A DNA stretch of 64,000 nt, from positions 171,319 to 235,318 of IMG/VR virus record IMGVR_UViG_3300028864_000014. One strand, given 5' to 3'. This document shows positions 1,564-62,683 of the stretch, in pieces (the first letter of the stretch is position 1; every line of letters starts with the position of its first letter). Under the pieces are notes generated by a model that saw nothing but the letters and a program-made list of their open reading frames with translations, was not told where the DNA came from and did not search any database. The translations under genes and the position numbers were made by a program.

Positions 1564-1815
1564 ATGGAAGCAATTTATAATACAAGCGATTATATTGAAA
1601 TGATATTTATGTTTGTGATGATGGTATTATTACTTATTGTTATTAAATATATACATGGAGACTATTCAGCAGAATCAATTGAAGAAATTAGTAAAGATGA
1701 ATTATCAATCACAAATGATAAAGGTGATGTAATAGGAAAAAAGTATATCAATACATATAAATACACATATAAAAATGGTAGTATTAAATATAAAACAAAA
1801 ACTATTAATTTATGA
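1564..1815 (+). CDS. hypothetical membrane protein
   Basis: N-terminal hydrophobic segment MIFMFVMMVLLLIVI. Confidence 0.7.
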   Translation: MEAIYNTSDYIEMIFMFVMMVLLLIVIKYIHGDYSAESIEEISKDELSITNDKGDVIGKKYINTYKYTYKNGSIKYKTKTINL

Positions 1816-2048
1816 TAACATCTCTAACCAATCTAACTAAATTGGATAATATTGCATATGAATTATATACTGATAATTATATTTCTAAAACATATGATCC
1901 TTTATCATTATTTTCGTTTCATTATATTTATTATAAGAAATGTAGTTGGGGAGGAACATCTTATGACGATGTTAAAAAAATTTATGATAACGCAAAAATT
2001 ACAATAAGAAAATTAAAATTAATTGAAATAGAAAATATTAAATTATGA
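1812..2048 (+). CDS. RKxKL-tagged micro-ORF (LDxIAYxLY subfamily)
   Basis: LDNIAYELY; ends IRKLKLIEI. Confidence 0.75.
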   Translation: MITSLTNLTKLDNIAYELYTDNYISKTYDPLSLFSFHYIYYKKCSWGGTSYDDVKKIYDNAKITIRKLKLIEIENIKL

Positions 2049-2281
2049 TAACATCAAATAAATTAGACGATATTGCATATAAATTATATATGAATAGAAT
2101 TGATTTTGATTGCGTATATAATTCAATGAGTAAAAATGAATTTAAAAATATTCTTTATGATAAAAAATTTGACATTGATTATTATAACAGAGAAAGAACT
2201 GTTATAAAAAGTTTTTATTATAAAGCTAATATTATTTTAAGAAAAGAAAAACTTATAGAAATATCAAAAAATATAAAATGA
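2045..2281 (+). CDS. RKxKL-tagged micro-ORF (LDxIAYxLY subfamily)
   Basis: LDDIAYKLY; ends LRKEKLIEI; tandem paralog of previous. Confidence 0.75.
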   Translation: MITSNKLDDIAYKLYMNRIDFDCVYNSMSKNEFKNILYDKKFDIDYYNRERTVIKSFYYKANIILRKEKLIEISKNIK

Positions 2282-2526
2282 TATATCTTGATGATGTTAT
2301 ACATTATGTCAAACATAATAAAGTTCGTTTAGATATTGTATCTGATTATAAACATATTTATGATTATGATTTTCACATAGAAGAAAATACTGAAGTTTCA
2401 GTGTATTTACATTTAAATAAAAAACAATACGGCGGTGAAGTTTGTTATATTAAAATTATTAAAATTAAATTATCAGATATAATATCTCAAATAAGAAAAG
2501 AAAAACTCAAAAAAATAAAATCATGA
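2278..2526 (+). CDS. RKxKL-tagged micro-ORF
   Basis: ends IRKEKLKKI. Confidence 0.75.
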   Translation: MIYLDDVIHYVKHNKVRLDIVSDYKHIYDYDFHIEENTEVSVYLHLNKKQYGGEVCYIKIIKIKLSDIISQIRKEKLKKIKS

Positions 2527-5128: not shown

Positions 5129-5296
5129 ATGGAGTCACATATAATTATACCAATAAGAGAAATTAAAGATAGAATGGCTCAAATAGAAAGTCAGATAGAG
5201 GTATTTAAACCCGATAGTGTATATTCATATGCATTATCTAAAATGCACTCATTATTGACAGAATTATTAGATACATCAAAAAAAATTGATTTATGA
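5129..5296 (+). CDS. hypothetical protein (55 aa)
   Basis: Hand-read ORF after promoter, ATGA-coupled to next. Confidence 0.65.
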   Translation: MESHIIIPIREIKDRMAQIESQIEVFKPDSVYSYALSKMHSLLTELLDTSKKIDL

Positions 5297-5754
5297 AACT
5301 TACAAAATATACAATTGAATATATGCCATTGTATTGTAATGGTAATGACTTTAATGCTCCTTTATCTTATAGATTAAAGCTTGTGATATCAGGTGATGAA
5401 TTATTTTTAATAAAAGAATATTTTAAGTCTGGATTTAATGATAGTGAATGTTGGGATGATTGGTGGATTTGTAAAGGTTATCATTATATAAATTGGGTTT
5501 CTATTATAACTAGAAATTTTGATGAAAAGTATTTAAAAGAATTAGAAATTAAGATATTTGAAATGTTTTATGATGCATCAGAAAAAATGATAGCTGAAAT
5601 AAATGAAGAACTGTTAAAATCTATTACTACAATGAATAAACAATTATCTAAGCAAAAAGAAATATCAAAGTTTGCTGATACATTCAATAGAAGAAGAAAA
5701 TTAAAAAATATAAATAAAATAGATAAATATGAAAGTGATGCAAGTATCGTTTGA
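5293..5754 (+). CDS. hypothetical protein with RKxKL-like motif near C-terminus
   Basis: NRRRKLKNI. Confidence 0.75.
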   Translation: MKLTKYTIEYMPLYCNGNDFNAPLSYRLKLVISGDELFLIKEYFKSGFNDSECWDDWWICKGYHYINWVSIITRNFDEKYLKELEIKIFEMFYDASEKMIAEINEELLKSITTMNKQLSKQKEISKFADTFNRRRKLKNINKIDKYESDASIV

Positions 5755-5941: not shown

Positions 5942-6439
<498 letters not shown>

Positions 6440-6672: not shown

Positions 6673-6942
6673 ATGAAGGATGAAAAATTAATTTATAAAG
6701 AAACTGAAATATTAAATTATATTAGAAGTTATTGTAAAATAAAATATTATAGTACTACAAATTCAACGGATGAAAGAATACAGGTAGATTATAATCTCTA
6801 TTATTCAATGTATTATGATATAGAAACTGAAGGATTAATAAGATTCTATTATGGATATAAAGTTGATTTTATTGATTTATCAATAGAATTTAAGAAATAT
6901 CAAAGAAAAACAAAATTAGAAAATTTAAATAAAATATTATGA
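6673..6942 (+). CDS. RKxKL-tagged micro-ORF
   Basis: ends QRKTKLENL. Confidence 0.75.
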   Translation: MKDEKLIYKETEILNYIRSYCKIKYYSTTNSTDERIQVDYNLYYSMYYDIETEGLIRFYYGYKVDFIDLSIEFKKYQRKTKLENLNKIL

Positions 6943-7208
6943 ACAAAGAATTATTGACCAAATTTATAGAAAAAAAGACAGGACTTAATATTAAAGAAAT
7001 ATCAAGTGTAGTATTAAAAGATACAGATGATGAATATGGCTGTATAGGAGAGCATTATGTTGTTGATTGTACAACTCAAAGTGATAACTATTTCATAGGT
7101 AATGATAATGAAATTGAAACTGAAATATATAAAAAAAAATGCTTAATTAGAGTAGATGAATATGATAGATATTTAAGCTCAATTAATTCTATAATTTGGC
7201 TAATCTAA
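6939..7208 (+). CDS. hypothetical protein
   Basis: 89 aa, coupled. Confidence 0.7.
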   Translation: MNKELLTKFIEKKTGLNIKEISSVVLKDTDDEYGCIGEHYVVDCTTQSDNYFIGNDNEIETEIYKKKCLIRVDEYDRYLSSINSIIWLI

Positions 7209-7212
7209 AATA

Positions 7213-7458
7213 ATGGAACATTTAAAAGTTAGTGATAATTTAAAAATAGGTGATAAAATAATCATTTTAAATATAGAAGGAACAAGTTTAATTTATGGTC
7301 AATCTTGTACAATAATTGAGCCTTATCACAGAAGAATTGGATTAATAAGAATAAAAGAATTTCCTGATTTAACTTTATTTATAAGTAGGTTTTCTGATAT
7401 CAAAGTAGTCAGAAAATATAAATTAGAAAAAATAAATAAATATGCCATCAAAAAGTAA
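7213..7458 (+). CDS. RKxKL-tagged micro-ORF (IGDKV, SH3/KOW-like subfamily)
   Basis: LKIGDKIII...SRF..VRKYKLEKI. Confidence 0.75.
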   Translation: MEHLKVSDNLKIGDKIIILNIEGTSLIYGQSCTIIEPYHRRIGLIRIKEFPDLTLFISRFSDIKVVRKYKLEKINKYAIKK

Positions 7459-7621
7459 ATATTTGCCTGATTATTGGAGTAATGGTAATAATAAAGCGAC
7501 TGAAGTATATGAAATAATAAAAAATTCTTCAAATGAAGAAATAGTAGAAGTTTTGAATATGTTTGATATTAAAGATATAGAGAAATTTTTAAGAAATAAA
7601 AAATTAAAAAAATTAAAATGA
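7442..7621 (+). CDS. RKxKL-tagged micro-ORF (DIKDIEK subfamily)
   Basis: Hand-read 59 aa, ends FDIKDIEKFLRNKKLKKLK. Confidence 0.7.
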   Translation: MPSKSKYLPDYWSNGNNKATEVYEIIKNSSNEEIVEVLNMFDIKDIEKFLRNKKLKKLK

Positions 7622-7836
7622 GAGAAATATCAAGAGTTTCTATGTCAGAATCAGAATTATATTCAACTATATCAAGAGCCATTAATTATGACATTGTTGG
7701 AGAAATACCAATTAGAATTGATAATCTTATTAAATATGCATCAAAAGAAGATATAAATGATTCTTTAGAAAAATTTGAAATTAAAGATATTGAGAAATTT
7801 TTAAGAACTAAGAAATTGAAAAATTTAAATAAATAA
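7618..7836 (+). CDS. RKxKL-tagged micro-ORF (DIKDIEK subfamily)
   Basis: FEIKDIEKFLRTKKLKNL. Confidence 0.75.
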   Translation: MREISRVSMSESELYSTISRAINYDIVGEIPIRIDNLIKYASKEDINDSLEKFEIKDIEKFLRTKKLKNLNK

Positions 7837-7838
7837 TT

Positions 7839-8045
7839 ATGTCATTTATGTCATTTGGAATTACAAATTCAATTAGAGATTCAATTAGAGATTATCTGAA
7901 TGTTCATGAAGTCTCAGATAAAATTGGAGTACTTATTGAAAATTTATCAAAAGAAGAAATTAATAATTCTTTAGATAAATTTGATATTAAGGACATTGAA
8001 AAATATTTAAGAAACAAGAAGTTAAATAAATTATTAAATGACTAA
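7839..8045 (+). CDS. RKxKL-tagged micro-ORF (DIKDIEK subfamily)
   Basis: FDIKDIEKYLRNKKLNKL. Confidence 0.75.
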   Translation: MSFMSFGITNSIRDSIRDYLNVHEVSDKIGVLIENLSKEEINNSLDKFDIKDIEKYLRNKKLNKLLND

Positions 8046-8304
8046 TTATAAAGGATATAAAGGTTATGGAAATTATGACTATACTATAGGAGTATGGAAT
8101 TTAGAAGATAATGATTTATATAATATATCATATCAGCTATATTTATTTTCTGACGGAAATGAGAATTATGTGAATATATCTTATGATCAAAATATATTTA
8201 TTAACATGATTGAAATTGGTGATCCTTATTGTAATAAATTTTTAAAAATCGCAAAATCATTAATAAGAAAAGAAAAATTAAATATTATAAATAACTTAAT
8301 ATGA
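8038..8304 (+). CDS. RKxKL-tagged micro-ORF
   Basis: ends IRKEKLNII. Confidence 0.75.
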   Translation: MTNYKGYKGYGNYDYTIGVWNLEDNDLYNISYQLYLFSDGNENYVNISYDQNIFINMIEIGDPYCNKFLKIAKSLIRKEKLNIINNLI

Positions 8305-8540
8305 CAATTCAATTAGAATATGATATTGATAAAATTGCATATGGATTATATTTGATATATTGTAAAAAAAACCAAAATTGGGGTCCAACATTTATATTTG
8401 AGGATTATGTATATATCAAATCACAGATGAAAAATTATACTTCTGAATATGATAAAAAAATAATAGTCGATAACTATAATAAAGCTAATATAATTTTAAG
8501 AAAAATGAAATTAGAAAAATTAGAAAATGATAATAGATAA
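8301..8540 (+). CDS. RKxKL-tagged micro-ORF (DxIAYxLY subfamily)
   Basis: IDKIAYGLY; LRKMKLEKL. Confidence 0.75.
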   Translation: MTIQLEYDIDKIAYGLYLIYCKKNQNWGPTFIFEDYVYIKSQMKNYTSEYDKKIIVDNYNKANIILRKMKLEKLENDNR

Positions 8541-8775
8541 GACAAAAGGTAATTGGTGCAAAGAAGGTGAATCTGATTATATAGATGACATAGCTTTTCA
8601 ATTATATCTAAATTATTATTATAAAGAATATGGAGATTTTAATGATGATTCTCCTCAGAATAATTTTAAAACAGTAAGATATACTCATAATAGCCCGTGG
8701 TATTCATTTTATATTAAATCATTTAAAAATTTAAGAATTGAAAAATTAAAAAAATTAGAAAATGTTAATAGATAA
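8527..8775 (+). CDS. RKxKL-tagged micro-ORF (IDKxxGxW / DDIAFQLY subfamily)
   Basis: IDKTKGNW, DDIAFQLY, LRIEKLKKL. Confidence 0.75.
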   Translation: MIIDKTKGNWCKEGESDYIDDIAFQLYLNYYYKEYGDFNDDSPQNNFKTVRYTHNSPWYSFYIKSFKNLRIEKLKKLENVNR

Positions 8776-9025
8776 AACAATAGGATATTGGTGTCAAAAC
8801 AATGAGTCTGATTGTGTAGATGATATTGCTTTTCAATTATATCTAAATTGTCATTTTGATATATATGGTTCAGTCTCTACTTCTGACCAAAATGACTTTA
8901 TGTGTTTAAGATATTATCATTCTATTTACTATTTATCTGGTTTTTATGAAAAAGCATTTAAAATTTCAAAAAATTTAATAAGAAAAGAAAAATTGAAAAA
9001 GTTGAAATATGAAATCAGTGCATGA
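8762..9025 (+). CDS. RKxKL-tagged micro-ORF (IDKxxGxW / DDIAFQLY subfamily)
   Basis: IDKTIGYW, DDIAFQLY, IRKEKLKKL. Confidence 0.75.
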   Translation: MLIDKTIGYWCQNNESDCVDDIAFQLYLNCHFDIYGSVSTSDQNDFMCLRYYHSIYYLSGFYEKAFKISKNLIRKEKLKKLKYEISA

Positions 9026-9311
9026 AATTGAATATTCAAATATTCACATAGATAAATCAATAGGAAGATGGTCTAAAGATATTCTTTATTCTGAACTTGA
9101 AGATGTGTTTTATCAGATATACGTTCATTGGTATTATAATGAATATATTATTGAAAATGATTCTGAAAATCCTTTATTGTCTCAAACATATTTCATGTCT
9201 TATATGAATACTATTAAAGAAACTAAGAATCACCATTCTTATGATGATTATTATAATAAAGCAACTCACATATTACGAAAAATAAAATTAGAAAAATTGA
9301 AAAATGAATAG
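9009..9311 (+). CDS. RKxKL-tagged micro-ORF (IDKxxGxW subfamily)
   Basis: IDKSIGRW, EDVFYQIY, LRKIKLEKL. Confidence 0.75.
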   Translation: MKSVHEIEYSNIHIDKSIGRWSKDILYSELEDVFYQIYVHWYYNEYIIENDSENPLLSQTYFMSYMNTIKETKNHHSYDDYYNKATHILRKIKLEKLKNE

Positions 9312-9555
9312 TGATTTTAAAATAGGAGATAAGGTATTTTTATGTGATGCAAGAAATTGTTTTACTGCAGAGTTGAATAAACAATATACTATCATTAGCA
9401 TAAAATATGATGATTATAACAAATATACAAAAATAGCATTTAATGAAAATATATCTGAATCAGAAGAATTGTGTTATTTGGATTCCAGAAGATTTAAAAA
9501 AGATATAAAATATGAAAGAAAAATAAAATTAAAAGAAATATTAAATAATGATTAA
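9304..9555 (+). CDS. RKxKL-tagged micro-ORF (IGDKV subfamily)
   Basis: FKIGDKVF...RRFKKDIKYERKIKLKEI. Confidence 0.75.
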   Translation: MNSDFKIGDKVFLCDARNCFTAELNKQYTIISIKYDDYNKYTKIAFNENISESEELCYLDSRRFKKDIKYERKIKLKEILNND

Positions 9556-9775
9556 TAAATTTAAATCAGGAGATAAAGTTATATGTATAGATAATACAAA
9601 TGCTTTTGAATTAATACCTTATATAAAATCATACACAATATCTCATATAAAAACTATTTTTATTTTTTTAGTTGATGAAGAATCCAAATTTCCTTATGTT
9701 TATACTAGATTTGAATTCGATATTAAAACAATGAGAAAGGATAAATTGAAAAAAATACCTAATCATGAAAATTGA
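9548..9775 (+). CDS. RKxKL-tagged micro-ORF (IGDKV subfamily)
   Basis: FKSGDKVI...RFEFDIKTMRKDKLKKI. Confidence 0.75.
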   Translation: MINKFKSGDKVICIDNTNAFELIPYIKSYTISHIKTIFIFLVDEESKFPYVYTRFEFDIKTMRKDKLKKIPNHEN

Positions 9776-10004
9776 AAAAATTAAATGTAATTTAAAAATA
9801 GGAGAACAAATTGTTATAATTAAAGATACTATTGGTAATTCGGAATTAAAAATGAATAAAATTTACATAGTTGAATATATTCATGAATATGTTAATCATA
9901 TTAAGTTAGTAGGATTTGAAGAACGTATATATCAAAGTAAATTATTTAGCAATGATATTAGATTAATAAGAAAAATTAAAATAGAAGAATTAAATGAACA
10001 ATGA
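9765..10004 (+). CDS. RKxKL-tagged micro-ORF (IGDKV subfamily)
   Basis: LKIGEQIV...DIRLIRKIKIEEL. Confidence 0.75.
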   Translation: MKIEKIKCNLKIGEQIVIIKDTIGNSELKMNKIYIVEYIHEYVNHIKLVGFEERIYQSKLFSNDIRLIRKIKIEELNEQ

Positions 10005-10185
10005 TATTGAGAATTACGATATGTTAGTTGAATATTTTAATCAAAAATTAAGTTTAGCGTCTGGTATTCCAAAAAAATATTTATATCCAGATCCACTTGA
10101 TTCAATTGATTTTGATGTCATATTAAAATATTTAAGAAAAAAGAAATTAGAATACATAAAAAATAACAATTTAAATAATGATTAA
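9994..10185 (+). CDS. RKxKL-tagged micro-ORF
   Basis: DSIDFDVILKYLRKKKLEYI. Confidence 0.75.
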   Translation: MNNDIENYDMLVEYFNQKLSLASGIPKKYLYPDPLDSIDFDVILKYLRKKKLEYIKNNNLNND

Positions 10186-16523: not shown

Positions 16524-16859
16524 ATGAATATAGTTAGACATAGCATAGGAGATAAAGTTGTTGCATTAACAAATCCATTAAATAATTTGTGTCAAAATAG
16601 AGTGAAAGGAACAGTGTATACTGTTCTTGATTATACATATTGTTCTAAGTGTGGAATTCAATCAATTAATATTGGAGTATTTACAACTCTTGAAAAATCT
16701 GAATGTAGTTGTGGAAATATTTCATTGAGTAAAGGTAAATATTGGACAGATTCTTTTCATTTTGCGAACGTTGATAATATTAAAGAAGCACTATCAGAAT
16801 CAATAAAAACAGAAAATTACGAATTATCATCATTATTAAGAGACATTAATATAATTTAA
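16524..16859 (+). CDS. SH3-like + Zn-binding + UVR (UvrB/C motif) protein
   Basis: IGDKVV, CSKC..CSC, C-terminal ESIKTENYELSSLLRD. Confidence 0.7.
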   Translation: MNIVRHSIGDKVVALTNPLNNLCQNRVKGTVYTVLDYTYCSKCGIQSINIGVFTTLEKSECSCGNISLSKGKYWTDSFHFANVDNIKEALSESIKTENYELSSLLRDINII

Positions 16860-16873
16860 AAAAAATTTAAAAT

Positions 16874-17215
16874 ATGAAAAAAGAATTTAACATTGGTGAT
16901 GAAGTAGTATCTTTATCAAATACAACTAACATTAAAAGTCAATTACGGATTGAAGGTAAAAAATACATTGTTATGGATGCTATGTATTGTCCAACATGTG
17001 GAGCACAGTGTATTAATATTGGAGGTGTTGCAAAATATCGTCAGGTAAAATGTGGATGTGGAGATGTTCAAGATAGTCGTGGTAAATCTTGGACTAATTC
17101 TACTGAGTTCTCTAAAGTTAATCACATTGAGAAAGAAATGTTAGATGCAGTTAAAATTGAAAATTACGAAGAAGCTGCAGTATTAAGAGATATTATGAAA
17201 GTTATGAATGCTTAA
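16874..17215 (+). CDS. SH3-like + Zn-binding + UVR (UvrB/C motif) protein, tandem paralog
   Basis: IGDEVV, CPTC..CGC, C-terminal DAVKIENYEEAAVLRD. Confidence 0.75.
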   Translation: MKKEFNIGDEVVSLSNTTNIKSQLRIEGKKYIVMDAMYCPTCGAQCINIGGVAKYRQVKCGCGDVQDSRGKSWTNSTEFSKVNHIEKEMLDAVKIENYEEAAVLRDIMKVMNA

Positions 17216-18197: not shown

Positions 18198-18569
18198 ATG
18201 AATTATTGTTGGATTAGATTTGAACTTGATTTATTTAATCATAAGCAAAAAATTTTAAAATCATTAGGCACTGATGATATAGAATATGAATTGAAAAAAC
18301 GCAAAGAATCTGATATTTACGTTAAAGATAGAAGTATTTTATATACAGAAATAGATTTAGAATTGAGTGATTATGATTCAGAGATATTATATGACTTGAC
18401 TGATGATGAAATGTTAAATGAATTGAAAATAAGGGGTTATAAGGTATTTAACAAAAATGAATATCCATCATTAGATTTGGCTACAAAAGAAGATATTTGC
18501 ACTATTTTAGGATTGAAAAAATGGGCAACAAAAGAGCAAATTTTATCTGAACTAAATATAATATTATGA
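18198..18569 (+). CDS. hypothetical protein
   Basis: 123 aa with internal repeat (TDDIEYELKKR / TDDEMLNELKIRG). Confidence 0.75.
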   Translation: MNYCWIRFELDLFNHKQKILKSLGTDDIEYELKKRKESDIYVKDRSILYTEIDLELSDYDSEILYDLTDDEMLNELKIRGYKVFNKNEYPSLDLATKEDICTILGLKKWATKEQILSELNIIL

Positions 18570-18703
18570 TTATAAACTATAATAAACCATATGTTCATAT
18601 TAGGCAACTATCTAAATCTACAGAATCTGAAATAAAATTTAAGATTAATATGATGTTAAGAAAACAGAAGCTTTTAAATATTAAAAACTGTAATGAAAAC
18701 TGA
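18566..18703 (+). CDS. RKxKL-tagged micro-ORF (45 aa)
   Basis: Hand-read; LRKQKLLNI. Confidence 0.65.
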   Translation: MIINYNKPYVHIRQLSKSTESEIKFKINMMLRKQKLLNIKNCNEN

Positions 18704-18818
18704 AAGTAAAATTGTTCTGAATGCAGTACAGACTTTAAAATATTACTGTTTAATGCTGAAGAATAAAAAAAGAAAACAGAAACTTAAAAAACTGAGTAAT
18801 GTTCAATTTAGGAGATAA
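18693..18818 (+). CDS. RKxKL-tagged micro-ORF (41 aa)
   Basis: Hand-read; KRKQKLKKL. Confidence 0.65.
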   Translation: MKTESKIVLNAVQTLKYYCLMLKNKKRKQKLKKLSNVQFRR

Positions 18819-18986
18819 AATTATTGATAAGTCATTTAGCAATGAAGTTTTTACATTTAAAAAATATAGTGCTAATAATATATTATCCCATTATTTTTTT
18901 ATATATGAAGATGAATATTTTCATTATGTAGATAATTGCATTACATTATCAGAATTTAGAAAACAGAAACTTAAAAAACTGAGTAA
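18771..18986. repeat. exact 29-bp direct repeat encoding the RKQKLKKLS tag
   Basis: AGAAAACAGAAACTTAAAAAACTGAGTAA at 18771-99 and 18958-86. Confidence 0.9.
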
Positions 18987-18993
18987 ATGTTAA
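18799..18993 (+). CDS. RKxKL-tagged micro-ORF (IGDKV subfamily)
   Basis: FNLGDKII; FRKQKLKKL. Confidence 0.75.
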   Translation: MFNLGDKIIDKSFSNEVFTFKKYSANNILSHYFFIYEDEYFHYVDNCITLSEFRKQKLKKLSKC

Positions 18994-19175
18994 GAAAAGG
19001 AGATGTATTAAGGTACAGATATGACGATAATAAGATTGTTACATTTGATTCTTATGTACTTGATGATCCTAATTTCTTTTTCACTCAAGAAATTCCAGGT
19101 ATGTTTAATTATATTCCTAATTTTATAACAGCATCTGAAATTAGAAAGCATAAATTAGAAAAACTAAATAAATGA
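18987..19175 (+). CDS. RKxKL-tagged micro-ORF (IGDKV subfamily)
   Basis: LRKGDVL; IRKHKLEKL. Confidence 0.75.
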   Translation: MLRKGDVLRYRYDDNKIVTFDSYVLDDPNFFFTQEIPGMFNYIPNFITASEIRKHKLEKLNK

Positions 19176-19417
19176 TACAAAATATAGACATTAAAAATAT
19201 TCATATTAATGATACTGTTATTGCAGTTAATATAGGTAACACTAGTTTAGAATTAAATAAAAAATATTATATTAAAGAAATTGATTATTTTCATAGTATA
19301 GAGCAATACTATTTTAAATTATATCATATGGGAGATGAAGGATTTTTAATTAGTAGATTTGATATTGATTTGAATGATATTAGAAAAAATAAATTAGAAA
19401 AAATAAATAAATGCTAA
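19172..19417 (+). CDS. RKxKL-tagged micro-ORF (IGDKV subfamily)
   Basis: INDTVIAV; RFDIDLNDIRKNKLEKI. Confidence 0.75.
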   Translation: MIQNIDIKNIHINDTVIAVNIGNTSLELNKKYYIKEIDYFHSIEQYYFKLYHMGDEGFLISRFDIDLNDIRKNKLEKINKC

Positions 19418-19659
19418 AACCAATTGATATTAAAAATATACAAGTCAATTCTGAAGTTGTTGCAGTTTCTACTGATATGAGCAATTTAGAAATTGGTAAA
19501 ATATATAAAATCAAAGAAATTGTTCACATAGAAGAATTTAATGTATATCAATTTAAACTTTTCAAAATGAGAGATACTAGATATTTAATAGATAGATTTA
19601 ATTCTGATATTAAATCAATCAGGATGGAAAAATTAAATAAAATATCAAATCATGATTGA
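19411..19659 (+). CDS. RKxKL-tagged micro-ORF (IGDKV subfamily)
   Basis: RFNSDIKSIRMEKLNKI. Confidence 0.75.
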   Translation: MLKPIDIKNIQVNSEVVAVSTDMSNLEIGKIYKIKEIVHIEEFNVYQFKLFKMRDTRYLIDRFNSDIKSIRMEKLNKISNHD

Positions 19660-19888
19660 CATTAAAAAATTAAAAATAGGAAATAAAGTAATTGCAGTCA
19701 ATGTTAATTTTTCTGAATTAATATTAAATAAAAAATACACAATTAGTTATATTGATGTTTGTGATAATTCATGTAATGACCGAATTAGATTGATTGAGAC
19801 TGGTAATAAGTTATATTATGATTTTAGATTTGATATTGATTTAAACTACATCCGAAAGGAAAAATTAAATAAAATATCAAATGATTAA
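19652..19888 (+). CDS. RKxKL-tagged micro-ORF (IGDKV subfamily)
   Basis: KIGNKVIAV; RFDIDLNYIRKEKLNKI. Confidence 0.75.
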   Translation: MIDIKKLKIGNKVIAVNVNFSELILNKKYTISYIDVCDNSCNDRIRLIETGNKLYYDFRFDIDLNYIRKEKLNKISND

Positions 19889-20126
19889 CCTCAAAACATC
19901 AAAAATTGGTGATAAAGTAATTGCTACTGATGTCACTCATTCTTTATTGACATTAAATAAAAAATATACAATTAGTGAAATTATTTATAATAACTCTGAT
20001 TTTGATGACTATAATTTTTGTGTAAGACTTAAAGAAACTGCATTAATTATATATTTTCCGTATAGATTTAAATATGATTTGAAAACATCAAGAAATAAAA
20101 AACTTAAACAACTATGCAAAAAATAA
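19881..20126 (+). CDS. RKxKL-tagged micro-ORF (IGDKV subfamily)
   Basis: KIGDKVIA; RFKYDLKTSRNKKLKQL. Confidence 0.75.
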   Translation: MINLKTSKIGDKVIATDVTHSLLTLNKKYTISEIIYNNSDFDDYNFCVRLKETALIIYFPYRFKYDLKTSRNKKLKQLCKK

Positions 20127-20365
20127 AATCTTTTAAAATTGGAGATAAAGTTATTGTTATTGATGATAGTAATAACAATTTAATTCTGACTAAAAAATAT
20201 ACAATTAGTGGAGTTTTTCATAGAGAATCATTAGATAATATTCCTGAACATAATCATTATTTAACATTCATAGAGTCTGGTGAACAAAAATATTTCAGTT
20301 ATAGATTTGATTTTGATTTAAAAACATCAAGAAAGAAAAAAATTGAAATCTTATGTCAAAAATAA
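20114..20365 (+). CDS. RKxKL-tagged micro-ORF (IGDKV subfamily)
   Basis: KIGDKVIV; RFDFDLKTSRKKKIEIL. Confidence 0.75.
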   Translation: MQKIKSFKIGDKVIVIDDSNNNLILTKKYTISGVFHRESLDNIPEHNHYLTFIESGEQKYFSYRFDFDLKTSRKKKIEILCQK

Positions 20366-20604
20366 AAATTGAATATTTGAAAATTGGTGATGATGTAGTT
20401 GTAATTAATAATAACAATACAATATTAGAATTTGGTAAAAAATATAAAATTAAACAAATTCATTTCAGTGTAAAATTTAATAAATATTACTTATCATTAG
20501 TAGGAAATTCCGATTTGAGATATAAAATTAAACGATTCAAATTAGATATTAAAACTGAAAGAAAACAAAAAATAGATAAACTTAAAGAATATGAAAGTAT
20601 ATAA
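20353..20604 (+). CDS. RKxKL-tagged micro-ORF (IGDKV subfamily)
   Basis: KIGDDVVV; RFKLDIKTERKQKIDKL. Confidence 0.75.
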   Translation: MSKIKIEYLKIGDDVVVINNNNTILEFGKKYKIKQIHFSVKFNKYYLSLVGNSDLRYKIKRFKLDIKTERKQKIDKLKEYESI

Positions 20605-20887
20605 AATTTACGAAATATCATATAGATATGGAGATGAACAAACCCCAGATGAAACGATCTTCACAACACCAGAAGTTAGAGATGAGTATTTTAAAGAACT
20701 TCTTAAAATTAGCAAAGAAAATGATCGTCTAACTGAAAGATTAGATTCAACAACAGAAAATGAATTTGTATTTGATGATGGCGGTAAATGGTCATATGAA
20801 ACTAAAAAATCAGATGAAGATATGAAAATAATTGAATCATTTACCATTAATGAAAAAGGATTGTTTAGGTTTTCATATATGAAATAA
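20591..20887 (+). CDS. hypothetical acidic protein
   Basis: 98 aa coupled ORF. Confidence 0.7.
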   Translation: MKVYKIYEISYRYGDEQTPDETIFTTPEVRDEYFKELLKISKENDRLTERLDSTTENEFVFDDGGKWSYETKKSDEDMKIIESFTINEKGLFRFSYMK

Positions 20888-20888
20888 T

Positions 20889-21137
20889 ATGGTAATTGAT
20901 AAACAATTTGGAATATGGGATTATAATGTTTCAACTTTATTAGATGATTTAGCATATTTCTTCTGTATTCAAGATTTTCATTCTGAAAATTATTATGAAG
21001 AGAAAATACCAACACAAAATCAATTTATTAAATGGTATAAGAGAAGTGATTATGGAATTAAAATGTATAAAAAAGCAAATAAATATCATTATAGAGAATT
21101 AATAAAACAAAAAATAGAAACTTTGAATAACATATAA
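20889..21137 (+). CDS. micro-ORF of IDKxxGxW subfamily (degenerate tag)
   Basis: IDKQFGIW, LLDDLAYFF, LIKQKIETL. Confidence 0.75.
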   Translation: MVIDKQFGIWDYNVSTLLDDLAYFFCIQDFHSENYYEEKIPTQNQFIKWYKRSDYGIKMYKKANKYHYRELIKQKIETLNNI

Positions 21138-21139
21138 TA

Positions 21140-21259
21140 ATGTCAGAAACTACAGATCAAATAAAATTATTAAGAGAATTGGCAATTAAACTTCACAAGA
21201 AATTTGTCAATAATATCAGAAAAAATAAATTACAAAAACTAAATGATAAGTTATGCTGA
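21140..21259 (+). CDS. RKxKL-tagged micro-ORF (39 aa)
   Basis: Hand-read; IRKNKLQKL. Confidence 0.65.
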   Translation: MSETTDQIKLLRELAIKLHKKFVNNIRKNKLQKLNDKLC

Positions 21260-21390
21260 TTAGTAAAAAAATAAATGGAGTTCCAGATATTGATAAAAAA
21301 ATCTTAGAAGAATTTACAAGGAAAATGAATAAACATTTCCGTAATAAAGATAGGAAAGAAAAATTAAATAAATTAAATGAAAAAAGATAA
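21253..21390 (+). CDS. RKxKL-tagged micro-ORF (45 aa)
   Basis: Hand-read; DRKEKLNKL. Confidence 0.65.
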   Translation: MLISKKINGVPDIDKKILEEFTRKMNKHFRNKDRKEKLNKLNEKR

Positions 21391-24173: not shown

Positions 24174-26069
<1,896 letters not shown>

Positions 26070-26121
26070 TTATTATTATTTTTATTGTATATATTAAATA
26101 ATAAAATTGAAAAAATGAATA

Positions 26122-26154
26122 AAAAAAGAGAGCAAATTATTTGCTCTCTTTTTT
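26122..26154. terminator. palindrome nearly identical to 24135-24170
   Basis: AAAAAAGAGAGCAAAT-t-ATTTGCTCTCTTTTTT. Confidence 0.85.
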
Positions 26155-26584
26155 ATCTAATTGAATAATCAATTATTTTTAATTCTTTGAATGATTTTAA
26201 TAATAGAATTTTATTCATCTCATGATCATAATAACCAAAATAATTATAATCATTAAATTCCTTCTTATTGATTAATATTTTCTCAATTAATATATTTATC
26301 TTATACTCATTTTCATTATAATTCGATTCTAAAAAATTCCAAATATATTTATGATCACACCAAATGAATTTATTGTCTGTATCTTGAATGAATAAACATT
26401 CTCCATTTATTTTATGATTTAATAAATCATCATTAGAAATATTATTCAATTTTAATAATTTATTTTTCCTTATATAAGATTCATCATAATACCAATAAAT
26501 TTGATGATATAAATTTTCACTAACCACTGGATAACATGACAACAATTTGTCTAATAACCAATTTCTTAAATCATCTGTTGACAT
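26153..26584 (-). CDS. Family X paralog (dispersed copy)
   Basis: NWLLDKLLSCYPV..YWYYDESYIRKNKLLKLNN..CLFIQD..WNFLESNY. Confidence 0.8.
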   Translation of the reverse strand: MSTDDLRNWLLDKLLSCYPVVSENLYHQIYWYYDESYIRKNKLLKLNNISNDDLLNHKINGECLFIQDTDNKFIWCDHKYIWNFLESNYNENEYKINILIEKILINKKEFNDYNYFGYYDHEMNKILLLKSFKELKIIDYSIR

Positions 26585-26585
26585 A

Positions 26586-27197
26586 TCAAATATTATTGTC
26601 AGTTTTAAATTTACTTAAATATTCTACTTGCTTGTAATGAGATGAATTAATCAAATCTTTTATGATATAATATACATCAGTAGTAGAATATTTAAGAATA
26701 TTATTTTCAGATTCGATATCAATATTTTTATTTGAAATTTTTATGTCAATTTCTTTTTTTATTTTTTCTTCTTCTTTCTTCTTATTTTCTTTAATACTTA
26801 AAAAATAAACAGACATAAATAAATGATTTAATTCAACTATACTATTTTTAGTTATAATATTTTTATCACTACTACCAATAATTTTACTTGAATCATCTTT
26901 ACCCCAATAAAACTCTTTACCTCTAATATCTACTATATATTCGACATGATTTCCTATTATATCTAATCTTAGAACCTTTGCTATTATATTGGCTGTGCTT
27001 GGATAATATGAATAAATCCAATCACCTGGTACTACATCAGATTCATCATCTAAAACATACATATTAAAATTATTATTTTTAACATCAAGATATCTCTTTG
27101 ATGCAAAATAATTATTATTTATGTCAGTATGCACATAAGACTTACCAATAGTAGGTAATATAACTATATCAGTATATTCTTCAATTTGTTTCATCAT
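26586..27197 (-). CDS. hypothetical protein
   Basis: 203 aa. Confidence 0.75.
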   Translation of the reverse strand: MMKQIEEYTDIVILPTIGKSYVHTDINNNYFASKRYLDVKNNNFNMYVLDDESDVVPGDWIYSYYPSTANIIAKVLRLDIIGNHVEYIVDIRGKEFYWGKDDSSKIIGSSDKNIITKNSIVELNHLFMSVYFLSIKENKKKEEEKIKKEIDIKISNKNIDIESENNILKYSTTDVYYIIKDLINSSHYKQVEYLSKFKTDNNI

Positions 27198-27547
27198 TTA
27201 ATTTTTTTATTAGAAAACTTAACTTTTATTCTCTGAAGTAAATTTAACTTATTATTATATTCTGATTTATATTTATTCATATCTCCAATATTATATATAT
27301 TAAGAGTGTTTTCTTCACTCATTATGTCCCTGTCAAATTTATAAACTTTCAACTGAATCAATATAAAAGAAAACTGAATAATGATAAATAGCCATGCAAT
27401 TAATCTTATTGTATTATTATTTGTGAATGTTGCAATTATATTTAATATAATTGATATTAAACAACAAACCCAAGTCATTAAAACATAAACTGGTTGCTTC
27501 TTAACAAATACTAAAATTTTCTTCATAACTAATAAAAAATTCTTCAT
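27194..27547 (-). CDS. two-TM membrane protein
   Basis: start moved to ATG 27547; TATATTTG -7 element at 27563-70 (minus). Confidence 0.7.
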   Translation of the reverse strand: MKNFLLVMKKILVFVKKQPVYVLMTWVCCLISIILNIIATFTNNNTIRLIAWLFIIIQFSFILIQLKVYKFDRDIMSEENTLNIYNIGDMNKYKSEYNNKLNLLQRIKVKFSNKKIK

Positions 27548-27607
27548 AATATATATTTTGTGCAAATATACTAATTAAATTTCAAATATGAAAACATATT
27601 TATAAAA

Positions 27608-27635
27608 AAAGAGAGATAAATTATTATCTCTCTTT
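27608..27635. terminator. GAGAG-class terminator
   Basis: AAAGAGAGATAA-atta-TTATCTCTCTTT. Confidence 0.75.
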
Positions 27636-27752
27636 AATTTGTTGTTTCTTATGAACAACTATGCTTTCTTGGCTTTGTCAAAGTTCGTGATGTTTTATAT
27701 CATCACAAATTAACTACATTAATTTATATCTCTATTTTATTTAAAAGTTTAA

Positions 27753-28085
27753 TTAAATGTTGAATTTGTTAGTATCAAATATATTCTTTAATTCTTCTTT
27801 GTTCTTGGACCAATTGATTATTTCAAATCTTGAAAATGGTATTGTATTTGAATATTTATAATCTCTAACATTTTTATATTTTCTTAAAGAATCTGGAACG
27901 TTAATGAAATGTACTTGATAAGGTTCTACTCTATTATCTTCATTATCAATTCCTATTATTTTTCCTATTTGATTACTAAGATATAAATTCAAATCAGGAC
28001 TATATTTGGTATTACAAATTACATAATCACCAACTTCTGGTTCTCCTTCATTAAAAGATTCGTATAGTTTAAATCCTGTTATCAT
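27753..28085 (-). CDS. late SH3/KOW-like protein with KxxE N-terminus and NKFNI C-terminus (copy 3)
   Basis: MITGFKLYESFNEGEPEVGDYVI...DTNKFNI. Confidence 0.8.
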   Translation of the reverse strand: MITGFKLYESFNEGEPEVGDYVICNTKYSPDLNLYLSNQIGKIIGIDNEDNRVEPYQVHFINVPDSLRKYKNVRDYKYSNTIPFSRFEIINWSKNKEELKNIFDTNKFNI

Positions 28086-28408
28086 ATATTAAATTTATTT
28101 GCATTTATTAAATATTCTAAATCTTCTTTTTTTTCAGAATAACCAACCATTTGAGAATGATAAAATGGTTTTATATATCCACTATCAATCTTTGTGAAAA
28201 ACTGAACTAATTCTTCTGGTACATTATCATATCTTATAACTAAGTTTTTTTTATCGTATTCTTCACCATATAAAACTCCTATTGTGCTATCAATAAATCC
28301 TTTCAAATTATATAGTATATCATTTCCACTATTCCAATTATATTCAATTACTATATAATCTCCAACTTTATATTTAGATAACCTTTCAAATTGTTTTATG
28401 TATTTCAT
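28082..28408 (-). CDS. late SH3/KOW-like protein, same family (copy 2)
   Basis: MKYIKQFE..KYKVGDYIV...NANKFNI. Confidence 0.8.
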   Translation of the reverse strand: MKYIKQFERLSKYKVGDYIVIEYNWNSGNDILYNLKGFIDSTIGVLYGEEYDKKNLVIRYDNVPEELVQFFTKIDSGYIKPFYHSQMVGYSEKKEDLEYLINANKFNI

Positions 28409-28692
28409 ATATTAAATTTGTTTGATTGTAGTAAAGGTTCTAATTCTTTTGAATTTTTTGCCCAATATATTATATTTTTTCTATTTACGAACCAAGTACC
28501 TGAAAAATCAATAACATATGAAGTAGAGTTAGCTTCATATAGTATATCAATTAATCTATGAATACCATTATTCACTAAGTCAATTGTTCCTTTTTGATAA
28601 TATGTATCATCTTCGATATCAACAATTACAAAGTCACCTTTCTCTGGCTCTCCTTCATTTATTGATTCATATATTTTAAATTTTGTAATCAT
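28405..28692 (-). CDS. late SH3/KOW-like protein, same family (copy 1)
   Basis: MITKFKIYESINEGEPEKGDFVI...QSNKFNI; TTAATATATA upstream. Confidence 0.8.
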   Translation of the reverse strand: MITKFKIYESINEGEPEKGDFVIVDIEDDTYYQKGTIDLVNNGIHRLIDILYEANSTSYVIDFSGTWFVNRKNIIYWAKNSKELEPLLQSNKFNI

Positions 28693-28726
28693 ATATTATA
28701 TATATTAATTTTTTATATTAAAAATA

Positions 28727-28757
28727 AAAAAGAGTAGATTTTAAATCTACTCTTTTT
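28727..28757 (-). terminator. terminator closing the structural operon
   Basis: AAAAAGAGTAGATTT-t-AAATCTACTCTTTTT. Confidence 0.8.
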
Positions 28758-28760
28758 ATG

Positions 28761-28967
28761 TTAATTGAATTGATATTCTATTACACTCTGTTCTGCATTA
28801 GTTAATCCAATTCCTAATATATTAATTCTTCCTCTATAAAAATTCTTAGGTGGTATAACACCATAATCTAACTTAATACTCATCGTATGTAATTTACCAA
28901 CTACTTTATTTAATGGTTGAATAACACCCATGTCTAACGATATATTCAAATTGTTTATTTTAGTCAT
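28761..28967 (-). CDS. module C peptide (ends VIEYQFN)
   Basis: 68 aa; internal repeat ISLDMGVI/IKLDYGVI. Confidence 0.75.
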   Translation of the reverse strand: MTKINNLNISLDMGVIQPLNKVVGKLHTMSIKLDYGVIPPKNFYRGRINILGIGLTNAEQSVIEYQFN

Positions 28968-28990
28968 TATTTTATTTTATTTTATTTTTA

Positions 28991-30703: not shown

Positions 30704-30705
30704 AA

Positions 30706-30972: not shown

Positions 30973-30989
30973 TTTTTTTTATATTTTTT

Positions 30990-32712: not shown

Positions 32713-32735
32713 AAATTATATATTTTTTATTATTT

Positions 32736-34748: not shown

Positions 34749-34762
34749 ATTTTATTTGTTTT

Positions 34763-38770: not shown

Positions 38771-38812
38771 AATTAATATTTTTTTTTATTTTCTTTATTT
38801 TTGAATATAAAT

Positions 38813-39172: not shown

Positions 39173-39192
39173 ATTATCAATTAATTTTTATA

Positions 39193-39936: not shown

Positions 39937-39937
39937 A

Positions 39938-43974: not shown

Positions 43975-44235
43975 TTATAATTTAAAACTTTCATCATCAT
44001 CAAAATCAAATTCATCACATGGTTCATCATCAAATAAATCCAAATTAAAATCCAAATTATCTAACTTAATTTTATTAGGTAGATTAAGTGGTATAGTTGT
44101 AGATGCTGAATTAATAATAACAGAATTTGAATTATTTATTTCTTCAAGTTTTCTTCTACGAATATATTGTTCAAGATCCTTTACATCAATTGAATTCAAT
44201 ATATCATCTATGTCAATGTTTACATTTAAGTTCAT
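43975..44235 (-). CDS. DIKDIEK-subfamily protein with RKxKL motif and acidic tail
   Basis: LNSIDVKDLEQYIRRRKLEEI...DDEPCDEFDFDDDE. Confidence 0.75.
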   Translation of the reverse strand: MNLNVNIDIDDILNSIDVKDLEQYIRRRKLEEINNSNSVIINSASTTIPLNLPNKIKLDNLDFNLDLFDDEPCDEFDFDDDESFKL

Positions 44236-44239
44236 TTTA

Positions 44240-44458
44240 TTATATATTAACGTATGTGTTTTGATATGAGTTTAAAGGAAAATCTATATTATAATCATCT
44301 GTACAAAATATAGGGTTTAATTCAAGTGGAGGTAGTTCAGTAGGATTTAAACAGTTTTCTAATTTTTTATTGCGAAGATACCTTTCAATAAGTCTTGGAT
44401 CAATTGAATTAAGTACCTGATCAACGTCTTCTAAATCAATTTCAAATTTTAATTTCAT
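44240..44458 (-). CDS. DIKDIEK-subfamily protein with RKxKL motif
   Basis: LNSIDPRLIERYLRNKKLENC. Confidence 0.75.
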   Translation of the reverse strand: MKLKFEIDLEDVDQVLNSIDPRLIERYLRNKKLENCLNPTELPPLELNPIFCTDDYNIDFPLNSYQNTYVNI

Positions 44459-44838: not shown

Positions 44839-45342
<504 letters not shown>

Positions 45343-45492: not shown

Positions 45493-46266
<774 letters not shown>

Positions 46267-46267
<1 letters not shown>

Positions 46268-46677
46268 TGACAAAAGAAGAATTAAGTGATTTTATATTGG
46301 AGACATTAAAAAAATGCTATAAAGTTAAACATGAGGATTATCCAAGTATAATTTTTTGGATATATGATGAACAATTCATTAGAAAAATTAAATTAGGCAA
46401 AATAAATAATCAAGACATAAAAATTACAAATGAAATTAACGGAACTTGTATATTTCAACAAGATTTTAAAAAATTAAAATTTCGTTGTAATGATGATATT
46501 TGGACTTTTTTATTCAGATACTATTCCGATGATTACTATGATAATCAGAAATTCATGAAAGATATACTAAAAAATATTACTAATTTAAATATGTATTTAC
46601 CAACAATGAATTCATCAACAGCTAATATATCATTGAAAAATTACAAGAAAATAAGTTTATATTTAAATGATGTATAA
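46267..46677 (+). CDS. Family X paralog, array 3/13
   Basis: same motif set. Confidence 0.85.
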
Positions 46678-47065
46678 AAAAGATTTATATGATTGGTTCT
46701 GGAATAAATATAATTCCTGCTATCAAGTTAAAGTAGAATTATATCCAGATAGTGTATTCTTAGTTTATGACGAAAAATATATAAGAAAACTTAAATTGTT
46801 TAAATTAAATAATACAGAAGAGTTAATTTCAATTAATAATGTTGAAGGAACATTTTTATTTAATCAGGATAATAAATTTAGAATTTTATGGCTGAGTGAA
46901 GAATTGTGGAAGTTCTTTGAAAAAAACTATTCATATGACTACTATGATATTCAAAAACTAATAAAAAAACTACTAAAAGATCATCCAATTTTATTCGATT
47001 ATAATCCTTTACCTGGTATGATTAAAAATATATATGAAAATAGTATTATAAAATCAAGATTATAA
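46667..47065 (+). CDS. Family X paralog, array 4/13
   Basis: same motif set. Confidence 0.85.
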   Translation: MMYKKDLYDWFWNKYNSCYQVKVELYPDSVFLVYDEKYIRKLKLFKLNNTEELISINNVEGTFLFNQDNKFRILWLSEELWKFFEKNYSYDYYDIQKLIKKLLKDHPILFDYNPLPGMIKNIYENSIIKSRL

Positions 47066-47985
<920 letters not shown>

Positions 47986-47989
47986 TAAT

Positions 47990-50626
<2,637 letters not shown>

Positions 50627-50634
<8 letters not shown>

Positions 50635-51091
50635 AGAAGAATTATCAAATTGGTTGATTAGCAAAATTTTATATTGCTATCCAGTAGTAGATAAAGAATG
50701 GAATGATTACGTTTTTTATTTCTATGACGAACAATATATTAGAAAACTTAAATTGTTTAAGTTATATAATATAAAAATAACATCGCCAAATCAAGTTAAT
50801 GGAATATGCTTATTTAGTTTAAATATTAAATATAAAATTATTTACTTTCATTATGAATATGTTTGGAAATTCTTTGAAAATAATTATATAAATAATTATA
50901 TACAAATTGAAAAATTTATAACTGAAATTATAAATGATTATAAACAACTAAATAAGTATTCACCAAAAAAAAATTCACAAGGATTTAGATATCCTGAACT
51001 AATAAGAAGTAAGAAAAATTTAGAAATTAGAGAAGCTGATTGGTCATCTCTACTTCCAAGTTCATATAAAAAATTAATAGTATTGAAATAA
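50627..51091 (+). CDS. Family X paralog, array 13/13
   Basis: same motif set. Confidence 0.85.

Positions 51092-61490: not shown

Positions 61491-62683
<1,193 letters not shown>

What the first reader, a model, noticed from the sequence alone, without database searches (positions are those of the whole stretch)
6673..10185. A shared C-terminal R-K-x-K-L-x-x-L peptide on dozens of unrelated micro-proteins
Seen: 13 consecutive coupled ORFs (7213-10185) and about 33 ORFs window-wide (1812-2526, 5293, 6673, 18566-21390, 43975-44458) carry R-K-x-K-[LI]-x-x-[LI], mostly at the very C-terminus. The bodies belong to at least three unrelated subfamilies (SH3/KOW-like IGDKV; helical DDIAxxLY; DIKDIEK) plus singletons. 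They lie mostly in operons behind host-type promoters. Inference: a portable basic amphipathic helix that addresses diverse effectors to one partner or compartment (common hub protein, membrane, nucleoid, phage compartment, secretion or degradation route), i.e. a plug-in effector system. I know no characterised description of it.
Basis: partly seen in the sequence, partly recalled or inferred. Interest (0 to 1): 0.85.

Follow-up and report, generated by a model that had tools for sequence, protein, structure and literature searches.

The report
Shared basic helix tag on phage micro-proteins
About fifty small genes in this stretch of an uncultured giant phage, and thousands more in related phages, end in (or contain) the same 8-residue R-K-x-K-L-x-K-L helix although the rest of each protein is unrelated, which points to an undescribed common docking or address element whose partner is still unknown.

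Summary
RK.K[LI]..[LI] occurs 36 times in about 135 window genes against 0.16 expected in shuffles. There are 29-30 micro-proteins with the motif 1-13 residues from the stop.

Selection acts on the protein. Leu and Arg codons vary as in the bodies, and core tail residues differ between sister phages in 15% of positions against 47% in the bodies.

With tails removed, the bodies form at least seven profile-unrelated types: an SH3-like barrel, a helical DDIAY type and others. In related phages the tail also sits on a gp32-type SSB, a ResIII fragment and DUF6794.

Arrays of tagged ORFs occur in more than 20 AT-rich viral contigs, mostly jumbo. No Pfam, PHROG, NCBIfam, cultured-phage or literature match was found.

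AlphaFold predicts the tail as a helix. It is strongly basic but not amphipathic.

Most likely it is a portable docking helix for one acidic partner, either nucleic acid or a hub protein. The partner, the timing and the localisation are untested.

The parts
1812..2526 (+). Three coupled micro-ORFs (1812-2048, 2045-2281, 2278-2526), helical DDIAY-type or single bodies, with a C-terminal tag
   Evidence: Motif at 2007-2030, 2240-2263 and 2494-2517, 2-5 residues from the stop. Sister-phage orthologues keep the tag.
5293..5754 (+). 153-aa protein with a variant tag (R-R-R-K-L-K-N-I) 13 residues from the stop
   Evidence: Motif at 5689-5712. The L005 orthologue, 146 aa, has it 4 residues from the stop. 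No Pfam or NCBIfam family.
5942..6439 (+). Class B paralogue (165 aa) with the motif internal at residues 39-46
   Evidence: Motif at 6056-6079. Member of alignment A1.
6673..6942 (+). 89-aa micro-ORF with a single-type body and a C-terminal tag
   Evidence: Motif at 6904-6927, 4 residues from the stop. The L005 orthologue keeps the tag.
7213..10185 (+). Thirteen translationally coupled micro-ORFs (59-100 aa), every one tagged. Starts and body types: SH3-like at 7213, 9304, 9548 and 9765; DIKDIEK at 7442, 7618 and 7839; helical DDIAY at 8301, 8527, 8762 and 9009; singles at 8038 and 9994.
   Evidence: ORF list and tails; body clustering. AlphaFold of 9304-9555 gives an SH3-like barrel plus helix 68-81, pLDDT 85.7.
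18566..20604 (+). Ten coupled micro-ORFs (41-83 aa), all tagged. Four short single-type bodies (18566, 18693, 18799, 18987) are followed by six SH3-like paralogues (19172 to 20353).
   Evidence: L005 orthologues keep the tag.
20889..21137 (+). Helical DDLAY-type micro-ORF with a decayed tail (I-K-Q-K-I-E-T-L, Arg lost)
   Evidence: Translation; aligned in A7.
21140..21390 (+). Two very short tagged ORFs (39 and 45 aa)
   Evidence: motif 5 and 4 residues from the stop. Sequences.
26153..26584 (-). Class B paralogue (143 aa) with an internal motif
   Evidence: Motif at 26447-26470. Member of A1.
43975..44458 (-). Two small ORFs (86 and 72 aa) with DIKDIEK-type heads. The motif is internal (about residues 26-34) and followed by a 40-50 aa extension.
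   Evidence: Translations; weak profile matches.
44839..45291 (-). Class B paralogue (150 aa, R-R-A-K-L variant)
   Evidence: Motif at 45154-45177. Member of A1.
45493..51091 (+). Tandem block of fourteen class B paralogues (116-168 aa), each with W[FY]YDExFIRKxKLCKLNN at residues 33-48
   Evidence: AlphaFold of 47990-48397: pLDDT 85.4, motif is helix 35-46 in the best-modelled part. No PDB fold match.
61491..62683 (+). Two further class B paralogues (218 and 179 aa)
   Evidence: Motif at 61605-61628 and 62258-62281. Members of A1.

Best explanation
The R-K-x-K-L-x-K-[LI] element is a short basic alpha-helix of about 14 residues. It behaves as a portable module, appended to or occasionally embedded in many unrelated small proteins of an uncultured clade of AT-rich, mostly jumbo phages with Shine-Dalgarno-less translation signals. 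Shown: it is real, it is selected as a peptide, it is predicted helical, and it occurs on at least seven unrelated body types. Its conserved residues (hydrophobic at -4, R0, K1, K3, L4, hydrophobic at 7, N8) cover one broad face, while positions 2 and 5 vary. Inferred: this face docks on one conserved acidic partner, so that variable heads are brought to the same place. The heads include SH3/KOW/Tudor-like barrels, helical bundles, a gp32-type SSB core, a ResIII-like fragment and DUF6794. My best guess for the partner is nucleic acid or an acidic hub protein of the replication or transcription apparatus, because the recognisable heads are nucleic-acid-handling folds and the tail carries about +3.6 net charge. 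Which partner it is, and whether it belongs to phage or host, is not shown.
For: Enrichment is more than 200-fold over shuffles, concentrated at C-termini. Leu and Arg codons vary synonymously, and codon usage at K1, K3, L4 and K6 equals that of the bodies. Between sister phages, core tail residues differ in 16/110 positions against 632/1337 in bodies, while synonymous differences are 16/94 against 180/705. Bodies without tails form 93 BLAST clusters and at least 7 profile-unrelated groups. In an exhaustive profile search with the SH3-like family, 87 of 88 small representatives carry the tag, whereas 54 long proteins with tandem copies of the same barrel almost all lack it, so the barrel does not need the helix. 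Of 24 database relatives of the helical family, 22 are tagged and 2 have a near variant. R0 and K3 have zero column entropy in 147 SH3-type sequences. The tag works in internal positions: class B, fused two-module proteins P0048 and P0074, and 43975-44458. Larger tagged proteins are a gp32-type SSB, a ResIII fragment and DUF6794. Flanking tail positions have lineage-specific flavours shared by unrelated bodies of one phage, as expected for co-evolution with one partner.
Against: No partner was identified and no binding, localisation or timing data exist. In class B the motif helix is the best-packed part of a compact domain. In gp32 a similar native helix (S-K-D-K-F-K-S-F) sits at the same place. 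The helix may therefore be partly structural. The lineage-specific flavour could also come from intragenomic duplication or gene conversion. 81% of tagged ORFs are coupled to a downstream ORF, so a translational role is not excluded.
Confidence: 0.45

Rival explanations
1. A structural capping helix with no common partner. The tail is simply a favourable C-terminal helix that packs on small barrels and bundles. It spread because arrays grow by tandem duplication and by recombination at gene junctions, so new bodies inherit the junction-proximal tail.
For: In class B the motif helix is integral to the fold, pLDDT 93-95. Native gp32 has a similar helix at the same position. Arrays differ between sister phages by copy number. 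Every body family has conserved acidic residues that could pair with R and K.
Against: The same barrel occurs widely without the helix. Near-invariance of R0, K1 and K3 across unrelated folds is not expected for solvent-facing or generic packing residues. No covariation was seen between helix positions 0 to +8 and the body, although that test is weak.
Confidence: 0.2
2. A translation-level role. The tail region is the A-rich, G-poor initiation region of the next overlapping ORF in a Shine-Dalgarno-less system, or the nascent basic peptide pauses the ribosome at the stop codon to favour re-initiation.
For: 0 of 130 genes have an SD core at -20 to -4, and A reaches 65-75% at -14 to -10. The motif lies about 25-43 nt upstream of the next start. 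152 of 188 tagged ORFs are coupled to a downstream ORF.
Against: The motif is conserved in the upstream reading frame while the distance and phase to the next ATG vary. Leu uses TTA, CTT, TTG, CTA and CTG as in the bodies. 23 tagged ORFs have no downstream gene within 60 nt, and 180 untagged ORFs are coupled without it. Internal copies exist in class B and in fusions. Spacing to the stop varies from 0 to 10 residues, which a peptidyl-transferase-centred arrest would not tolerate.
Confidence: 0.1
3. A capsid-targeting signal like the T4 internal-protein CTS. The basic tail docks diverse small proteins onto the prohead core so they are packaged and injected as anti-defence cargo.
For: T-even internal proteins are highly diverse with only the targeting sequence conserved (PMC3012670). 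Related contigs carry a T4-type gp32. The small size and diversity of the proteins fit.
Against: The tag is C-terminal or internal, not N-terminal. A protease-type L/I-x-E site before it is not consistent, with E at -2 in only 32%. The arrays lie on the strand opposite the tail-fibre-like genes. About 50 carriers in 64 kb is a lot of cargo.
Confidence: 0.1
4. A shared degron that hands early proteins to a host protease (ClpXP, Lon or FtsH) for timed removal.
For: It is mostly near the C-terminus, and the basic-then-hydrophobic pattern loosely recalls the MuA-type ClpX signal (my own recollection, not tested here).
Against: 0-10 variable residues follow the motif, and internal copies are conserved. 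Terminal degrons need a defined C-terminal end.
Confidence: 0.05
5. A membrane-targeting in-plane amphipathic helix of the MinD or FtsA type.
For: The tail contains basic and Leu residues and is mostly C-terminal.
Against: The hydrophobic moment is 0.19, below shuffled tails at 0.32. Mean hydrophobicity is -0.46, and Arg sits in the middle of the Leu stripe.
Confidence: 0.03

Closest known systems
T4 capsid targeting sequence (CTS) on internal proteins
   Same: One short conserved peptide on otherwise highly diverse small phage proteins in plastic loci of T4-type phages (PMC3012670).
   Different: The CTS is N-terminal, cleaved by the prohead protease, and on late proteins. Here the element is a C-terminal or internal basic helix without a consistent cleavage site, in arrays opposite the structural genes.
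Encapsulin cargo-loading peptides and microcompartment encapsulation peptides
   Same: Portable terminal peptides that address unrelated proteins to one shell (PMC8346489 for encapsulins).
   Different: The sequence motifs differ. Microcompartment peptides are amphipathic, and this tail is not. No shell gene is linked in the window.
Hub-binding short linear motifs (sliding-clamp-binding motif, SSB C-terminal tip)
   Same: A short motif at protein ends, shared by unrelated proteins, that docks on one hub (PMC11139829 for the clamp).
   Different: Those motifs are hydrophobic or acidic. This one is a Lys/Arg-rich helix, and its hub is unknown.
PeSL mobile regulatory cassettes of T4-type phages
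   Same: A conserved short element at the boundaries of small variable genes in plastic regions (PMC2839356, PMC4122927).
   Different: PeSLs are intergenic DNA elements (promoter plus stem-loop). Here conservation is in the peptide, with background codon usage.
Small SH3-like barrels with a C-terminal helix (KOW, Tudor, chromo-barrel, PWWP, YorP)
   Same: The fold predicted for the largest body family.
   Different: Similarity is at fold level only (PDB E above 0.03), with no Pfam membership. The tag also occurs on non-barrel bodies.

Membership tests
T4-type capsid targeting sequence | N-terminal position of about 10 residues | tested here: not met
   The motif lies 0-13 residues from the C-terminus or is internal.
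T4-type capsid targeting sequence | Prohead-protease site (L/I-x-E) between signal and cargo | tested here: inconclusive
   E at -2 in 32% and L/I at -4 in 44% of 199 tails. It is common in the L009 and L022 lineages and rare in the window lineage.
T4-type capsid targeting sequence | Carrier proteins present in the virion | not testable with these tools
   Needs virion proteomics of an isolated phage.
Amphipathic targeting helices (microcompartment encapsulation peptide, MinD/FtsA membrane anchor) | High helical hydrophobic moment with a clean apolar face | tested here: not met
   Moment 0.19 against 0.32 for shuffled tails, with R0 inside the Leu stripe.
Encapsulin cargo-loading peptide | C-terminal peptide on cargo encoded next to an HK97-fold shell gene | tested here: not met
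   The position fits, but no shell gene was found next to the arrays among the annotated ORFs and the motif is unlike known loading peptides.
C-terminal protease degron (ssrA or MuA type) | Signal at the extreme C-terminus | tested here: not met
   0-10 variable residues follow the motif, and conserved internal copies exist.
PeSL-type DNA cassette boundary | Conservation at the DNA level, independent of reading frame | tested here: not met
   Codon usage at K1, K3, L4 and K6 equals that of the bodies, and six Leu codons are used.
SH3-like small beta-barrel fold (body of the largest family) | Five-strand barrel recognised by structure comparison | tested here: met
   AlphaFold pLDDT 85.7. Best PDB matches are NusG KOW, YorP and Tudor at probability 0.98-0.99 but E 0.04-0.1. 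BFVD matches reach E 2e-4.
T4 gp32 single-stranded DNA-binding protein (only for L022:5514-6095, outside the window) | Match to the Pfam gp32 model above the gathering score and to solved gp32 cores | tested here: met
   30.5 bits against a cutoff of 26.8. PDB 2a1k, 1gpc and 8gme at E 4e-6 to 1e-5. 872 phage records match by tblastn.

The most novel reading that the evidence does not exclude
An address code in an uncultured clade of jumbo phages. One 8-residue basic helix routes well over fifty different accessory proteins per genome, including an SSB and a helicase-like protein, to a single site such as the phage DNA or replication factory, a phage-built compartment or the prohead core. This would be the phage counterpart of a nuclear localisation or cargo-loading signal, and a ready-made handle for finding that site.
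Probability: 0.3. Interest if true: 0.9.

Novelty: new variant of a known kind. Interest (0 to 1): 0.72.

Why it matters
Small phage ORFs are the largest pool of proteins with unknown function. A single conserved handle on thousands of them offers one experimental entry point: pull down with the peptide, or mutate three residues. That could reveal where they all act. If the partner is a hub or a compartment, it would define a new organising principle of infection in a phage clade that has no cultured member. It would also supply a natural portable tag. Even if the helix proves to be structural, it defines several large unannotated protein families that deserve profile models.

Tried and rejected
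- **Cultured phages.** Megablast and tblastn with a 12-kb stretch, a class B protein, the 1335-aa protein and a two-module tagged protein found nothing useful.
- **Family libraries.** Pfam, PHROGs and NCBIfam on tagged proteins found no family.
- **Reference genomes.** A DNA-pattern scan of 185,579 species genomes gave 18 single chance matches and no arrays. The pattern was narrow, so absence is weak evidence.
- **Shine-Dalgarno idea.** I first thought the post-motif residues encoded SD sites. The count rejected this: 0 of 130 genes have one.
- **Promoters.** The Bacteroidota promoter pattern is not enriched.
- **Frameshifting.** I considered programmed frameshifting through the A-rich tail into the next ORF. 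I dropped it after reading one junction by eye (7442), where a stop lies just upstream in the downstream frame. This was not tested systematically.
- **Covariation.** Mutual-information analysis between tail and barrel gave no signal for helix positions 0 to +8, but with 147 sequences this is inconclusive.
- **Literature.** Searches for the motif and for shared C-terminal motifs on phage small proteins found nothing relevant.
- **Protein atlas.** It gave only unnamed viral clusters.
Full report
**What the window is.** It is the last 64 kb of a 235,318-bp IMG/VR contig. Identical copies occur in four samples. GC content is 20-30%, there are no tRNAs, and nothing similar exists among 50,697 cultured-phage records. 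The large genes on the - strand look like tail fibres, with collagen repeats and carbohydrate-binding modules. None of 130 genes has a Shine-Dalgarno core at -20 to -4, where 7.7 are expected. G is depleted there and A reaches 65-75% at -14 to -10. The Bacteroidota promoter pattern is not enriched, however.

- The 13 ORFs from 7213 to 10185 are coupled, and all carry the motif 1-8 residues from the stop.
- In a set of 135 genes the strict pattern occurs 36 times against 0.16 in shuffles, and 21 times against 0.016 in the last 18 residues.
- There are 29-30 C-terminal carriers of 39-153 aa.
Fourteen of them lie in tandem at 45493-51091.
- Two - strand ORFs at 43975-44458 carry an internal copy followed by an extension.

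**The element is a peptide, not a DNA signal.**
- Leu is encoded by TTA, CTT, TTG, CTA, CTC and CTG, and Arg by AGA, AGG, CGA and CGT.
- Over 199 non-redundant tails, codon usage at K1, K3, L4 and K6 is indistinguishable from that of the bodies. There are modest shifts at R0 and position 7.
- I matched window ORFs to two sister phages (L005, L118) by body only. Core tail residues differ in 16 of 110 positions against 632 of 1337 in bodies. Synonymous differences are 16/94 against 180/705.
- The distance from the motif to the next start codon varies from about 25 to 43 nt, in different phases. 23 tagged ORFs have no downstream neighbour, and 180 untagged ORFs are coupled without the motif.

**The bodies are unrelated.**
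- With tails removed, window proteins fall into class B, an SH3-like group, a DIKDIEK group, a helical DDIAY group and 13 singletons.
- Across all fetched loci, 193 bodies give 93 BLAST clusters.
- Profile-profile comparison merges these into an SH3-like superfamily and a helical superfamily. At least five further types remain unlinked.
- AlphaFold models 9304-9555 as a small barrel plus a C-terminal helix at residues 68-81, pLDDT 85.7. Foldseek finds KOW, YorP, Tudor and chromo-barrel folds at weak E-values, and uncharacterised phage proteins in BFVD.
- Class B models as a compact alpha/beta domain, pLDDT 85.4. The motif is helix 35-46 in its best-modelled part, and there is no PDB match.

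**The tag is widespread.**
- A DNA pattern for the tail retrieved many IMG/VR contigs. Scanning them shows arrays of tagged ORFs in more than 20 distinct AT-rich contigs, mostly 113-330 kb.
- One 39.8-kb lake contig (L009) has about 30 consecutive tagged ORFs.
- An exhaustive profile search with the SH3-type family finds 5,950 cluster representatives at E of 0.001 or better. Of the 88 small ones among the best 150, 87 carry the tag. 54 long proteins with tandem copies of the barrel almost all lack it.
- Fused two-module proteins exist with internal tags or with the first tag lost.
- Of 24 database relatives of the helical family, 22 are tagged and 2 have a near variant.
- In related phages the tail also ends a gp32-type SSB, a ResIII-like fragment and a DUF6794 protein.
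- In the SSB the tail aligns with the native gp32 helix S-K-D-K-F-K-S-F, and the protein stops there. The acidic C-terminal domain is missing.

**Anatomy of the helix.** The logo is [LI] at -4, K at -3, R0 (defining), K1 (87%), x, K3 (defining), L4 (88%), x, K6 (63%), [LI]7, N8 (40%). It is followed by 0-10 variable residues, most often 3-4. In an alignment of 147 SH3-type sequences that was not selected by the pattern, R0 and K3 have zero entropy, like the core Phe. On a helical wheel, positions -4, 0, 4 and 7 form one stripe flanked by K1, K3 and N8, while positions 2 and 5 vary. That wheel reading is my own, taken from the logo. Net charge is about +3.6. The hydrophobic moment is low, 0.19 against 0.32 for shuffled tails, so this is not an amphipathic membrane or shell-binding helix. 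Positions -2 and -1 have lineage-specific flavours shared by unrelated bodies of the same phage.

**Interpretation.** The best reading is a portable docking helix whose conserved face binds one acidic partner. The recognisable heads (SSB, helicase-like fragment, KOW/Tudor-like barrels) and the charge point to nucleic acid or a replication or transcription hub. That step is inference. The main rival is a structural capping helix spread by array duplication. It is supported by the buried helix in class B and by the native gp32 helix. It is weakened because the barrel exists widely without the helix and because exposed basic residues are invariant. Translation-level, cargo-loading, degron and membrane readings are less likely, for the reasons given under the rivals.

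**Novelty.** No Pfam, PHROG or NCBIfam model covers these proteins, no cultured phage carries them, and the literature searches found nothing. The concept of a shared short peptide on diverse proteins is known, from the T4 capsid targeting sequence (PMC3012670), encapsulin loading peptides (PMC8346489) and clamp-binding motifs (PMC11139829). This is therefore a new variant of a known kind, with an unknown partner.

Noticed in passing
window 45493-51091 (+), also 5942, 26153 (-), 44839 (-), 61491, 62144: An expanded family of 18 paralogues (116-218 aa) with invariant C17, Y33, R39, K42, F63 and W79. The confident AlphaFold model has no match among solved structures. The tandem block sits between tail-fibre-like genes of the opposite strand.
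   Followed up: partly
whole window, gene starts: No Shine-Dalgarno sequences at all. Upstream regions are G-depleted with an A peak at -14 to -10, consistent with a Bacteroidota-type host. A weak Por_Secre_tail hit in the sister phage (L005:789-1742) points the same way.
   Followed up: partly
L022:5514-6095 and L110:200-775: A T4 gp32-type single-stranded DNA-binding protein that ends in the basic tag exactly where T4 and RB69 gp32 have S-K-D-K-F-K-S-F. It lacks the acidic C-terminal interaction domain.
   Followed up: partly
L112:9115-10986: A full-length Hsp70/DnaK homologue (Pfam E 1.7e-192) encoded just downstream of a tag array on a 141-kb viral contig. Related jumbo contigs also encode IF3, RtcB, thymidylate synthase, Dam methylases, an NAD-dependent ligase and a Tad3-like Thoeris inhibitor.
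   Followed up: no
window 24174-43469 and 51125-61074 (-): Two families of paralogous large genes: six with collagen-like or tail-fibre features, and three of 503-570 aa. These are interleaved with repeated small ORFs (28761/30990/32736 and 30706/34482), suggesting duplicated receptor-binding modules.
   Followed up: no
window 16524-17200 (+): Two adjacent paralogues (111 and 113 aa). The sister-phage counterpart has a weak UVR-domain hit. They lie just after a 303-aa ORF whose same-sized syntenic counterpart in the sister phage (L005) carries a radical-SAM hit.
   Followed up: no
P0048, P0074, P0053, P0054, P0058 (database proteins): Natural fusions of two neighbouring array members. Some keep both tags, one internal. 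Others have lost the first tag, which shows that arrays evolve by fusion as well as by duplication.
   Followed up: partly
L096 (contig positions 65169-74503 of the same 235-kb contig): Three more tagged ORFs far outside the window, so the tag is used genome-wide and the total per genome is well above the roughly 50 seen here.
   Followed up: no
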